A DNA stretch of 63,835 bases, the filler included, from Octopus bimaculoides (Eukaryota), in assembly GCF_001194135.2 (NCBI RefSeq). It is 7 parts of 7 records of this genome, joined end to end, with 100 filler letters (N's around TTAATTAATTAA, not from the genome) between each part and the next. Parts side by side here need not be neighbours in the genome. Positions count along the whole stretch, not along the records: positions 10,228 to 18,622 come from NC_068981.1; 6 more parts are not named here. The stretch is one strand, 5' to 3'. Positions 10,228 to 12,659 of this stretch are shown here, piece by piece. Below the pieces are notes generated by a model. It saw only the letters and a list, made by a program, of their open reading frames with translations, searched no databases and was not told the DNA's origin. The position numbers and the translations under genes were made by a program. Every line of letters begins with the position of its first letter. Position 1 is the stretch's first letter.

Positions 10228-10420
10228 TTAGTTTCCCTTGCTTCTGGAGTAGGTATTTTTGCAGTCCTATGGTGGTTATTTTATAATAGTTTTCTAGCTG
10301 TATAAGACCCCTACCACTTTCTGTGCGTTGTATATATAGCCTTTCTATGTCAGATTTTGGGTGGTGCATCCTATATCCTGTCATTATTTTTCTTGTTTTC
10401 CTGTCTATTTTACATAGTTC
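10228..10420 (-). mobile_element. R4/Dong-like non-LTR retrotransposon RT C-terminal fragment
   Basis: LCKIDRKTRKIMTGYRMHHPKSDIERLYIQRTESGRGLIQLE. Confidence 0.75.
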
Positions 10421-10434
10421 GTTTATTATTATTA

Positions 10435-10486
<52 letters not shown>

Positions 10487-10847
10487 GTCTCTAAGGCCAT
10501 ATTTTGTTTATCTATTTCGTTTTCTTTTTTCTTTCTTCTTTTTTGCTTTCTTTTCTCCTTGACTGTCCGTCTTGCTTTGTTATGTTTTGCTGGTTGCCTC
10601 CTGAATGGATGCAATATTATCGATAATGGTACGAAATAGCGCTCGACACTTTGGCCGATAACTAATGAGGAACTGTTGACCTTCTGTGTTTGTTCTCCAG
10701 TCGTCTGCGCATTCAGTGCACTTAGTATGTGTTTTTCCGTCCGTTTGTTTATTATTATACGTGTTTGACTTCTGACAATATCATTCACGTAACACTCTCC
10801 TTATTTTTTACCTATATATACTTGCATTAAGCAGATGCCAGAAAGTA

Positions 10848-10936
10848 ACTTAAAGGCCAAGTGTTTCGAGTGTTGGCACTTATTTGTGTGAACTAGTTTG
10901 ATAAGTGCCAACGCTCGAACCTCTTCGCTCTTGAGT
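10848..10936 (+). ncRNA. Candidate microRNA precursor hairpin
   Basis: 10865-10884 pairs with 10900-10919 (20 bp including G-U), closing a 15-nt loop that starts UGUG. An in-register, bulge-free lower stem extends to 10848/10936 with 5 mismatches. Confidence 0.5.
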
Positions 10937-11479
10937 CAATCTGTTGCTTCTGCTAAATATTATTAAAAATATACATATACTCATGTTTTTAGCTCTATTT
11001 TTCAACATATCTATTTATATATACACACGTGTGTGTGTATTATGTATATATATATATATTTCTGACACGACTCTATCTTCGTATCTTTCTCCCCCTCTCG
11101 TTCTTCCTTCTGTTGTTCTTCGCCTCTCCCCTTCACTACTATCTCACTCTCTCTCTCTTTTCCTCCCTGTTTCTCGTTTCTCACCTATATTCTACTTCCT
11201 TTTTTCCCTTTTATTCTCTCTCTACCACTCTTTCTCCTTACCCCTTGCTGGTCACATGTGTCCGGCTCCTGCTTCCTTTCTTATGTTGGCCACTGCCAAT
11301 CTAGCACGAACTTCTCTCTTCCTTTGAGTTCGTCACATCACAGCGTTCTGTATACATATATATATTTTCACGTCTGGCCCTATTAGCCCTTCATGTTATT
11401 TTCCCTGTTTCGTTTTCCAGTCTTGTTTTCTGTTCGCCACGATATTCCTCCGCTTTACAAATTTAATTTGTTTCCGCGG

Positions 11480-11720
11480 GAAGAGCCATTCTAACAATGC
11501 GTCTTGCCCTAGCTCTTCGAAACGCTTAGTATTAGAATGGTGGCAGCTGATGAAGGAAATGTTCTCCATGTGGCCTGTGTGCTTTCTGTGGTCTGTTTAT
11601 GTTCTGTTTTTCATTTTGTCCACGTTTTTTTTGTGACGTCCTGTACCCAGATATGCATGTATATATACATGTAGATGTAGGTATGTACATACATGTACGT
11701 ATATATGCATATACTCACAT
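11480..11720 (+). repeat. Dispersed repeat carrying split hammerhead-like boxes (probable Penelope pLTR remnant)
   Basis: TCTTCGAAACG...TTAGAAT...CAGCTGATGAAGG...TCCTGTACCCAGATATGCA; copies at 27430-27640 and 52728-52930. Confidence 0.55.
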
Positions 11721-11766
11721 ATCTTTTGAATTATATATATATATATATATATATAAGCACCACTAT

Positions 11767-12584: not shown

Positions 12585-12659
12585 NNNNNNNNNNNNNNNN
12601 NNNNNNNNNNNNNNNNNNNNNNNNNNNNNNNNNNNNNNNNNNTTATTATTACCTTTAAT

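What the first reader, a model, noticed from the sequence alone, without database searches (positions are those of the whole stretch)
10848..10936. Pri-miRNA-like hairpin not explained by any repeat
Seen: a 20-bp near-perfect upper stem (TTCGAGTGTTGGCACTTATT / GATAAGTGCCAACGCTCGAA), a 15-nt loop starting UGUG, and a bulge-free lower stem with 5 mismatches, about 37 paired positions in all. G-U pairs favour the plus strand. No second copy is visible in the window. Known: Microprocessor substrates have ~35-bp stems and often an apical UGU(G), and coleoid cephalopods have many lineage-specific miRNAs. The 3p arm could begin UAAGUGCC (an AAGUGC-type seed). I do not recognise it as a known family, and a CNNC motif is not evident.
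Basis: partly seen in the sequence, partly recalled or inferred. Interest (0 to 1): 0.7.

Follow-up and report, generated by a model that had tools for sequence, protein, structure and literature searches.

The report
Lone pri-miRNA-shaped palindrome in octopus DNA
The 89-base hairpin is real and has the shape of a microRNA precursor, but octopus DNA holds tens of thousands of such palindromes and nothing here shows it is a gene, so it is most likely an ordinary by-product of mutation.

Summary
Positions 10848-10936 form a bulge-free imperfect palindrome with 37-nt arms (29 Watson-Crick pairs, 4 G·U, 4 mismatches) and a 15-nt loop starting UGUG. It folds at -43 kcal/mol on the plus strand (z = -6.4) and is single-copy in the piece. 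Chance cannot produce it: about 2e-5 are expected in the piece.

The miRNA-gene reading is not established. Every Rfam hit is a generic long-stem match far below threshold (miR-430 scores 20.9 bits against 47.3). None of 14 processing registers matches a named Octopus vulgaris miRNA seed in the held tables of Zolotarov et al. 2022. The site for UAAGUGCC is listed there as "non-seed".

SINE copies identify the piece as octopus DNA (up to 94.6% identity to O. bimaculoides). A matched census finds two further palindromes of the same grade in about 70 kb of octopus DNA. That implies roughly 10^4-10^5 per genome, against 162 annotated miRNA genes.

No target-site duplication and no second copy were found.

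Best reading: a non-genic palindrome made by a local inverted duplication or template switch, at most miRNA raw material. I put P(real miRNA) at about 0.1. Small-RNA reads, genome-wide copy number and orthologous loci could not be tested here.

The parts
10848..10884 (+). 5' arm of the imperfect palindrome (37 nt)
   Evidence: Pairs position for position with 10936-10900: 29 Watson-Crick, 4 G.U, 4 mismatches, no bulges.
10885..10899 (+). 15-nt spacer / apical loop, TGTGTGAACTAGTTT, which starts UGUG
   Evidence: Unpaired in both the minimum-free-energy and centroid structures.
10900..10936 (+). 3' arm of the imperfect palindrome (37 nt)
10863..10884 (+). Hypothetical 5p product GUUUCGAGUGUUGGCACUUAUU, if the hairpin were cut 22 bp from the apical junction. 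This is inferred, not observed.
   Evidence: Geometry of the fold. An alternative register 13 positions from the base gives 10861-10882. No small-RNA data were available.
10902..10923 (+). Hypothetical 3p product UAAGUGCCAACGCUCGAACCUC, with seed AAGUGCC. This is inferred, not observed.
   Evidence: It gives a 2-nt 3' overhang relative to the 5p product above (geometry). Its 8-mer site GGCACTTA is listed as a 'Non-seed kmer' in Zolotarov et al. data S2.
10830..10842 (+). Probable decayed outer extension of the left arm
   Evidence: Pairs with 10940-10954 (12 Watson-Crick pairs) beyond a 5x3-nt internal loop. The flank gain is -14.6 against -7.6 +/- 2.8 kcal/mol for shuffled flanks, P about 0.01.
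10940..10954 (+). Probable decayed outer extension of the right arm

Best explanation
It is a lone, partly decayed DNA palindrome in non-coding, repeat-rich octopus DNA, and not a gene.

The most likely origin is a single local event that copied roughly 40-55 nt in inverted orientation next to itself. This would be a replication template switch or a short inverted duplication. The copy then accumulated at least 8 point substitutions in the 37-position core and a few indels at the outer edge.

If the plus strand happens to be transcribed, the RNA would fold into a 33-bp stem over 37 positions with a 15-nt loop. That fits the Microprocessor's length ruler, so it could leak a ~22-nt duplex: GUUUCGAGUGUUGGCACUUAUU and UAAGUGCCAACGCUCGAACCUC. 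In that sense it is raw material for a miRNA (a proto-miRNA), not an established one.

Shown: the structure, its non-random nature, its single-copy status locally, and the high background density of such palindromes. Inferred: the template-switch origin, the absence of function, and the hypothetical products.
For: 1. The palindrome is real and far beyond chance, so a copying mutation made it.
2. The piece is octopus DNA, crowded with a LINE tail, three SINE copies, two other dispersed repeats and many microsatellites. It holds no credible coding ORF.
3. Base rate. Besides the target, two palindromes of the same grade occur in 70.4 kb of non-N octopus DNA. One is window 15985-16072, with 30 of 37 Watson-Crick pairs. 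The other is L005:12158-12242, in a hairpin that folds at -43.1 kcal/mol. That is about 1 per 35 kb. With a 2.7-Gb genome (my knowledge) it gives about 8e4 per genome, with a Poisson range of 1e4 to 3e5. O. bimaculoides has 162 annotated miRNA genes (PMC9699675), so the prior is about 0.2%.
4. Independent figure from primates: template switching made more than 6,000 suitable hairpins but at least 18 miRNA genes, about 0.3%. The same paper names a promoter as the limiting factor (PMC10710096).
5. Nothing marks it as a transposon. No target-site duplication of 4 nt or more exists at any boundary (0 observed, 4.5 expected by chance). There is no second copy in the piece or in L005. The palindrome fades out rather than ending at defined termini.
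6. There is no clear sign of selection. A mismatch-free run of 20 or more, given 4 mismatches in 37 positions, has P = 0.18.
7. It matches no known miRNA family or annotated octopus seed.
Against: - All four true mismatches lie in the lower 17 positions (P = 0.036). The two changes in the upper 20 bp are both pair-preserving G.U on the plus strand. That is the pattern selection on a miRNA duplex would leave, although it is only marginal.
- The stem and loop dimensions are close to the Microprocessor optimum, and the loop starts UGU.
- Zolotarov et al. say their miRNA count is an underestimate and excludes species-specific genes.
- The template-switch origin cannot be shown without an outgroup sequence.
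- Copy number was tested in only 70 kb, which excludes only families above about 1.3e5 copies.
Confidence: 0.5

Rival explanations
1. It is a decayed copy of a low- or medium-copy miniature foldback or MITE-type DNA transposon, comparable to human Made1. It consists almost entirely of two terminal inverted repeats around a short spacer, and it is non-genic at this locus.
For: [quoted passage not shown] Here there are 37-nt arms and a 15-nt spacer. TA lies immediately to the left of the core (10846-10847). The region is full of mobile elements. A second palindrome with nearly the same architecture (37 + 14 + 37) lies 5 kb away.
Against: The right flank reads CA, not TA, and no target-site duplication of 4 nt or more exists at any boundary. 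There is no second copy in the 8.2 kb of the piece or in 62 kb of O. bimaculoides DNA. The two palindromes in the piece share no sequence. The pairing continues weakly beyond the supposed termini. The outer ends, which a transposase would recognise, are the most decayed part.
Confidence: 0.28
2. It is a genuine, young, octopus-lineage-specific miRNA gene transcribed from the plus strand. Drosha and Dicer process it, and the 3p arm UAAGUGCCAACGCUCGAACCUC (an AAGUGC-type seed) acts as guide.
For: It has 33 bp over 37 positions, a 15-nt loop and an apical UGU at 10885-10887. The hairpin persists in a 246-nt context. The plus strand is favoured by 5.7 kcal/mol. Mismatches are confined to the lower stem (P = 0.036). 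The proposed 3p product starts with U and has a weakly paired 5' end. Coleoids have many lineage-specific miRNAs, and the published count is called an underestimate.
Against: The prior from hairpin density is about 0.2%, with a range of 0.05-1.7%. It belongs to no Rfam family. GGCACTTA is explicitly a non-seed k-mer with background conservation of 0.567, and 13 other registers are absent from the held tables. There is no basal UG and no CNNC at +16 to +18. The base of the stem continues into a further helix and not into single strands. A 20-bp duplex with no mismatch is unusual for conserved animal miRNAs (my knowledge). No evidence of transcription was obtainable.
Confidence: 0.1
3. It is a structured RNA element of another kind. 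It could be a hairpin source of endogenous siRNAs, an A-to-I editing substrate for ADAR inside a host intron or UTR, or a cis-acting element of a neighbouring mobile element.
For: A near-perfect 20-bp duplex is a better Dicer/siRNA or ADAR substrate than a typical miRNA duplex (my knowledge). Octopus neural transcripts are heavily edited (PMC9699675 abstract). The plus strand around it is pyrimidine-rich and intron-like.
Against: The LINE fragment is on the opposite strand. It is 5'-truncated at about 10440, and its 3' end points away from the hairpin. The hairpin is not part of the SINE. No host gene or transcript could be identified.
Confidence: 0.08
4. It is an assembly or sequencing artefact, such as a chimeric fold-back read.
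For: The piece comes from a gapped draft scaffold, with N runs at 12585-12642 and 13116-13262.
Against: Artefactual fold-backs are long and perfect. This palindrome is short, carries 8 substitutions and lies about 1.6 kb from the nearest gap.
Confidence: 0.04

Closest known systems
Made1 MITEs and the hsa-mir-548 family derived from them (Piriyapongsa & Jordan 2007, PMC1784062)
   Same: A short palindromic DNA unit made of two ~37-nt inverted arms and a short spacer. If transcribed, it forms a stable pre-miRNA-like hairpin.
   Different: Made1 is multi-copy, has TA target-site duplications and comes from a known mariner. Here no second copy, no duplication and no parent element were found. The spacer is 15 nt, not 6.
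Hairpins generated by template-switching mutations, and the de novo miRNAs that arise from them (Monttinen, Frilander & Loytynoja 2023, PMC10710096)
   Same: A single-copy inverted repeat that arises in place with near-perfect pairing and the dimensions of a pri-miRNA. Most such hairpins never become genes (at least 18 of more than 6,000).
   Different: A template-switch origin is demonstrated by comparison with an ancestral or outgroup sequence, which was not available here. It is inferred only by excluding the signs of a transposon.
Lineage-specific 'Novel' miRNA families of Octopus (Zolotarov et al. 2022, PMC9699675; MirGeneDB)
   Same: The same host lineage (the SINE matches O. bimaculoides), a non-conserved sequence, and a hairpin of suitable size.
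   Different: Those genes are defined by small-RNA reads from both arms and by presence in two octopus species. This hairpin's possible seeds are not among the named seeds in the held tables, and UAAGUGCC is explicitly non-seed. The paper also reports that no two novel families share a scaffold, whereas this piece holds two such hairpins.
AAGUGC-seed miRNAs of vertebrates (miR-430 / miR-302 / miR-17 type; Rfam RF01413, clan CL00096)
   Same: The 3' arm contains AAGUGC at a position that could serve as a seed.
   Different: The covariance-model score is 20.9 bits against a gathering score of 47.3. It is no better than the hits to unrelated plant and herpesvirus hairpins. Those families are restricted to vertebrates (my knowledge). 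Any resemblance would be a six-base convergence.

Membership tests
Bona fide animal miRNA gene (MirGeneDB / Fromm et al. criteria, as applied by Zolotarov et al. 2022) | Hairpin with at least 16 complementary nucleotides between the two arms | tested here: met
   33 pairs over 37 positions, 20 of them contiguous.
Bona fide animal miRNA gene (MirGeneDB / Fromm et al. criteria, as applied by Zolotarov et al. 2022) | Reads of ~20-26 nt from both arms, with 2-nt 3' overhangs (Drosha and Dicer signatures) and uniform 5' ends | not testable with these tools
   No small-RNA data can be reached from here.
Bona fide animal miRNA gene (MirGeneDB / Fromm et al. criteria, as applied by Zolotarov et al. 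2022) | Presence of the locus in a second octopus species, which the paper requires for a novel family | not testable with these tools
   No whole cephalopod genome is searchable here. Only 76 kb of O. bimaculoides could be fetched, and it is not the orthologous locus.
Bona fide animal miRNA gene (MirGeneDB / Fromm et al. criteria, as applied by Zolotarov et al. 2022) | Seed identical to that of an annotated O. vulgaris miRNA | tested here: not met
   Six 3p and eight 5p registers were tested as seed-site k-mers, thirteen as 7-mers and one only as an 8-mer, and none carries a miRNA name. GGCACTTA is labelled 'Non-seed kmer'. Caveat: both tables are truncated in the held copy, and the files contain no mature sequences.
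Canonical Microprocessor (Drosha-DGCR8) substrate | Stem of about 35 bp and an unstructured apical loop of 10 nt or more | tested here: met
   37 stem positions and a 15-nt loop. The criterion is as stated in PMC10710096.
Canonical Microprocessor (Drosha-DGCR8) substrate | Single-stranded flanks at the basal junction | tested here: inconclusive
   The base opens into a 5x3-nt internal loop, which is followed by a further 12-bp helix.
Canonical Microprocessor (Drosha-DGCR8) substrate | Sequence motifs: basal UG, apical UGU/GUG, and a downstream CNNC at about +16 to +18. The motif positions are from my knowledge of Auyeung et al. 2013 and have not been validated in cephalopods. | tested here: not met
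   Only the apical UGU is present (10885-10887). The basal position reads CU or AA. The nearest unpaired CNNC motifs are 24-30 nt downstream, at 10947-10953.
miR-430 / AAGUGC-seed families (Rfam RF01413) | Covariance-model score at or above the family's gathering score | tested here: not met
   20.9 bits against 47.3.
Any Rfam 15 family | Score at or above the gathering threshold | tested here: not met
   The best hits are mir-3688 at 26.6/84, mir-H11 at 26.1/70 and MIR3627 at 25.8/64. Several hit both strands, so they are generic stem matches.
MITE of the Made1 / Tc1-mariner type | Terminal inverted repeats making up nearly the whole element | tested here: met
   37-nt arms and a 15-nt spacer. 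This shows a resemblance in shape only.
MITE of the Made1 / Tc1-mariner type | Flanking target-site duplication (TA for mariner-type elements) | tested here: not met
   The flanks read TA on the left and CA on the right. No duplication of 4 nt or more exists at any boundary.
MITE of the Made1 / Tc1-mariner type | Multiple dispersed copies in the genome | tested here: inconclusive
   There are 0 further copies in 70 kb of octopus DNA. This excludes only families above about 1.3e5 copies.
Hairpin generated by a template-switch mutation | An ancestral or outgroup sequence that lacks the inverted copy, with one arm explained as a reverse-complement copy of the adjacent sequence | not testable with these tools
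   No orthologous sequence is available.

The most novel reading that the evidence does not exclude
The hairpin is a very young miRNA specific to one octopus species or genus, born from a template-switch palindrome and not yet annotated. Its 3p guide would carry an AAGUGC-type seed that converges on the vertebrate miR-430/302/17 seed class.
Probability: 0.07. Interest if true: 0.4.

Novelty: new member of a known kind. Interest (0 to 1): 0.15.

Why it matters
As it stands, this is one more example of a common class: short palindromes that mimic miRNA precursors.

The practical lesson concerns the scan. In octopus DNA a pri-miRNA-shaped hairpin with z about -6 occurs roughly once per 35 kb. Hairpin shape alone therefore predicts a miRNA gene in well under 2% of cases, and such calls need read or conservation evidence.

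If small-RNA data did show processing, the locus would be a clean example of de novo miRNA birth in the lineage with the largest invertebrate miRNA expansion. That would be of moderate interest to specialists, but it would not open a new question.

Tried and rejected
1. Known RNA family. I ran Rfam at permissive thresholds on the whole piece and on the hairpin alone. Only generic sub-threshold stem matches appeared. The many mir-297, mir-3149 and mir-466 hits elsewhere in the piece are TA/TG microsatellites.
2. Literature match. Sixteen-mers from both arms occur in no paper's main text. My first search of the Zolotarov supplements for the arm sequences found nothing. I then showed that search was uninformative, because let-7 and miR-1 mature sequences are not in those files either. 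I replaced it with the seed-site test. No supplements are held for MirGeneDB 3.0.
3. Homologues in DNA collections. A pattern of both arms with a variable loop gave three hits. All are bacterial terminator-type perfect palindromes with unrelated flanks, so they are chance matches. There were no viral hits.
4. Reaching the locus through spurious flanking ORFs. These gave no exact records and no homologues.
5. Whether the LINE contains the hairpin. It does not. Only a 45-aa RT tail matches, and the element is truncated at about 10440.
6. MIR-96 relationship. The 5' arm contains UUGGCAC, and Rfam mir-96 scores 23.1 bits against 65. I rejected this, because the motif sits at positions 11-17 of any product the hairpin geometry allows, not in the seed.
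7. A cluster with hairpin 2. I rejected this: the two share no sequence, hairpin 2 folds better on the opposite strand, and none of the six most plausible hairpin-2 registers tested matches a named seed.
8. A LINE-tail query and a SINE query, both from very abundant repeats, each returned a single hit. This shows the protein collections hold annotated octopus proteins but not six-frame ORFs of octopus DNA. A short ORF across the hairpin therefore could not report copy number.
9. Printing of the SINE core sequence in any paper: none found.

Full report

Yes. As plus-strand RNA it folds into one unbranched hairpin of -43.0 kcal/mol. Dinucleotide shuffles average -21.6 +/- 3.4, so z = -6.4, and none of 200 shuffles folds as well.

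A position-by-position table gives 37 stem positions: 29 Watson-Crick pairs, 4 G.U pairs (positions 4, 8, 24, 37 from the base) and 4 mismatches (positions 7, 11, 15, 17). There are no bulges. The upper 20 positions (10865-10884 with 10900-10919) are continuously paired. The loop is the 15-nt TGTGTGAACTAGTTT.

Everything else checks. The minus strand folds less well (-37.3) because the G.U pairs become A.C. The 4:1 asymmetry among transition-type changes is not significant on its own.

The hairpin survives folding in a 246-nt context. Pairing continues beyond a 5x3-nt internal loop, between 10830-10842 and 10940-10954. The palindrome is therefore probably about 124 bp long and decays outward.

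Chance cannot make this object. A gapless inverted repeat with at least 29 of 37 Watson-Crick pairs is expected 1.7e-5 times in the piece and about 6 times in 2.7 Gb. Shuffled controls gave none. A copying mutation made it.

**2. What is around it, and whose DNA is it?**

The piece (8,190 non-N bases, two assembly gaps) has no credible coding ORF.

- At its left edge, on the minus strand, is the C-terminal tail of a LINE reverse transcriptase (10228 to about 10440). It is 60% identical over 45 residues to a LINE in an unidentified eukaryotic contig. The element is 5'-truncated at an (ATT)n tract and does not reach the hairpin.
- Three plus-strand copies of a tRNA-derived SINE lie at 12655-12878, 15146-15364 and 15380-15550.
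- An ORF running through one SINE copy hits "uncharacterized protein LOC106868243 [Octopus bimaculoides]" at 77% identity.
- The 76-kb O. bimaculoides chromosomal stretch around that gene (L005) holds 13-16 copies of the SINE, with up to 94.6% DNA identity. It also holds copies of two further repeats of the piece, 11514-11755 and 18353-18622.

The piece is therefore octopod DNA, either O. bimaculoides or a close relative.

**3. Is it a known miRNA or RNA family?**

No. Rfam at permissive thresholds gives the hairpin only 20-27-bit matches, against gathering scores of 47-100. The matched models are mutually unrelated (human mir-3688, herpesvirus mir-H11, plant MIR3627 and MIR529, mir-96, miR-430), and several hit both strands. 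Such matches reward any long stem. The miR-430 hit, which is the AAGUGC link, scores 20.9 bits against 47.3.

Neither arm appears in any paper's main text. The supplements of Zolotarov et al. 2022 hold no mature sequences, as my positive control with let-7 and miR-1 showed. My first negative search therefore meant nothing.

The supplements do list, by name, the 7-mer and 8-mer seed sites of all annotated O. vulgaris miRNAs. A site is defined as the reverse complement of seed positions 2-8, plus a trailing A for 8-mers. I tested six registers of the 3' arm and eight of the 5' arm, and none is a named seed. Its conservation between the two octopus species is 17/30 = 0.567, which is background level, since let-7 itself scores 0.574.

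The tables are truncated in the held copy, with 20,073 further rows in one sheet. This test therefore has moderate power, not full power.

**4. How much does the shape say? The base rate.**

I ran the same census on the piece and on genuine O. bimaculoides DNA. By RNAfold, I looked for unbranched hairpins of at least 30 bp and -38 kcal/mol or better in non-microsatellite windows.

- The piece has two: the target and a second hairpin at about 15985-16075 (z = -7.6 on the minus strand).
- L005 has five, of which two are complex palindromes. The other three are a minisatellite, a tRNA-like SINE head and a microsatellite.

By a gapless inverted-repeat count matched to the target, followed by a looser count with a complexity filter, the comparable objects are the target, window 15985-16072 (30 of 37 Watson-Crick pairs, 14-nt spacer) and L005:12158-12242.

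The target was selected for study, so I leave it out. That leaves 2 per 70.4 kb, or about 1 per 35 kb. For a 2.7-Gb genome (my knowledge) this means about 8e4, with a Poisson range of roughly 1e4 to 3e5. O. bimaculoides has 162 annotated miRNA genes. The prior that such a hairpin is an annotated miRNA is therefore about 0.2% (0.05-1.7%).

An independent figure from primates agrees. Template switching created more than 6,000 suitable hairpins, but at least 18 became miRNA genes, about 0.3%. The same paper names a promoter as the limiting factor.

Zolotarov et al. also state that no two of their novel families share a scaffold. Here two such hairpins sit 5 kb apart, and they fold best on opposite strands.

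**5. Features for and against processing.**

For:
- The stem has 37 positions, against a preferred ~35 bp.
- The loop has 15 nt, against a preferred 10 nt or more (criteria as quoted).
- UGU lies at the start of the loop.
- A cut 22 bp below the loop would give GUUUCGAGUGUUGGCACUUAUU (10863-10884) and UAAGUGCCAACGCUCGAACCUC (10902-10923), with 2-nt overhangs. The 3p strand starts with U at a weakly paired end.
- All four mismatches lie in the lower stem (P = 0.036). Both changes in the upper stem preserve pairing.

Against:
- There is no basal UG and no CNNC at +16 to +18. The nearest CNNC motifs are 24-30 nt away.
- The base of the stem runs into another helix, not into single strands.
- A 20-bp duplex with no mismatch is more typical of young or siRNA-type hairpins (my knowledge).
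- The apparent protection of the upper stem is weak evidence. A mismatch-free run of 20 or more arises in 18% of random placements.

**6. Origin.**

The anatomy closely recalls Made1 MITEs, which have two 37-bp inverted repeats and a 6-bp spacer and are the source of hsa-mir-548. The defining marks of a MITE are nevertheless missing.

- The flanks read TA and CA.
- No duplication of 4 nt or more exists at any boundary (0 found, 4.5 expected by chance).
- There is no other copy in 70 kb of octopus DNA. This excludes only families above about 1.3e5 copies.
- The pairing fades out instead of ending at termini.

I therefore prefer a local inverted duplication or template switch (confidence 0.5) over a decayed MITE (0.28). 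Only an outgroup sequence or a whole-genome copy count can decide between them.

**7. Verdict.**

The hairpin is real and has the shape of a pri-miRNA. The step to "miRNA gene" has no positive evidence beyond shape, some negative evidence and a very low prior. I put it at about 0.1, which is generous in order to allow for unannotated species-specific loci.

Expression, orthology and genome-wide copy number are the deciding data, and none could be obtained with these tools. The finding is best filed as an ordinary member of a known class: palindromes that are raw material for miRNAs. Its interest is low.

Noticed in passing
window 15985-16072 (fold tested on 15975-16085): A second, unrelated pri-miRNA-grade palindrome lies 5 kb from the first. 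It has 37-nt arms with 30 Watson-Crick pairs and a 14-nt spacer. It folds at -42.7 kcal/mol on the minus strand (z = -7.6) and -39.2 on the plus strand. It has a weak Rfam mir-29 hit (23 bits against 46.7). Its plus-strand 3' arm shares ACCAUCUG with miR-29 but lacks the AGCACCA seed. None of six plausible registers matches a named octopus seed.
   Followed up: partly
window 10228-10440, minus strand: The C-terminal tail of a LINE reverse transcriptase (motif ..IDRKTRK..HPKSD..RLY..GRGL..) is cut by the edge of the piece and 5'-truncated at an (ATT)n tract. It is 60% identical to a LINE in a 1.07-Mb eukaryotic contig of ENA assembly ERZ25066847.
   Followed up: partly
window 12655-12878, 15146-15364, 15380-15550 (plus strand): Three copies of a tRNA-derived SINE, two of them in tandem. 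L005 (O. bimaculoides) holds 13-16 copies, with the best at 94.6% identity. An annotated O. bimaculoides protein (LOC106868243) is partly SINE-derived.
   Followed up: yes
window 11514-11755 and 18353-18622: Two further dispersed repeats are shared with O. bimaculoides. The first is 88.5% identical to L005:22838-23088, with one copy there. The second has 7 copies at about 73% identity. Neither family was identified.
   Followed up: no
window 15700-15760, minus strand: A tRNA-like 3' half with a B box (GGTTCGATCC). ARAGORN does not call it a tRNA. It is probably the head of another SINE family.
   Followed up: no
window 16100-17200, and 11650-11720, 13040-13115, 13263-13320, 14259-14340: TA, TG and ACAT microsatellite tracts produce dozens of sub-threshold Rfam 'miRNA' hits (mir-297, mir-3149, mir-466, mir-1277), with E-values down to 1e-8. 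They also give the most stable folds in the piece. These are low-complexity artefacts.
   Followed up: yes
L005:12151-12250 (O. bimaculoides CM046612.1): An AT-rich imperfect palindrome with a 42-bp stem (-43.1 kcal/mol). It has the same grade as the finding and served as a background comparator.
   Followed up: partly
L001:1832-1867 and L003:7671-7706: The same bacterial locus occurs both in metagenome contig MKWU01008798.1 and in a contig binned as 'Kistimonas sp. bin40'. It carries a perfect terminator-type palindrome, CGTTGGCACTTATGGGCTATAGCCCATAAGTGCCAACG. That palindrome shares 12 nt per arm with the octopus hairpin by chance.
   Followed up: yes
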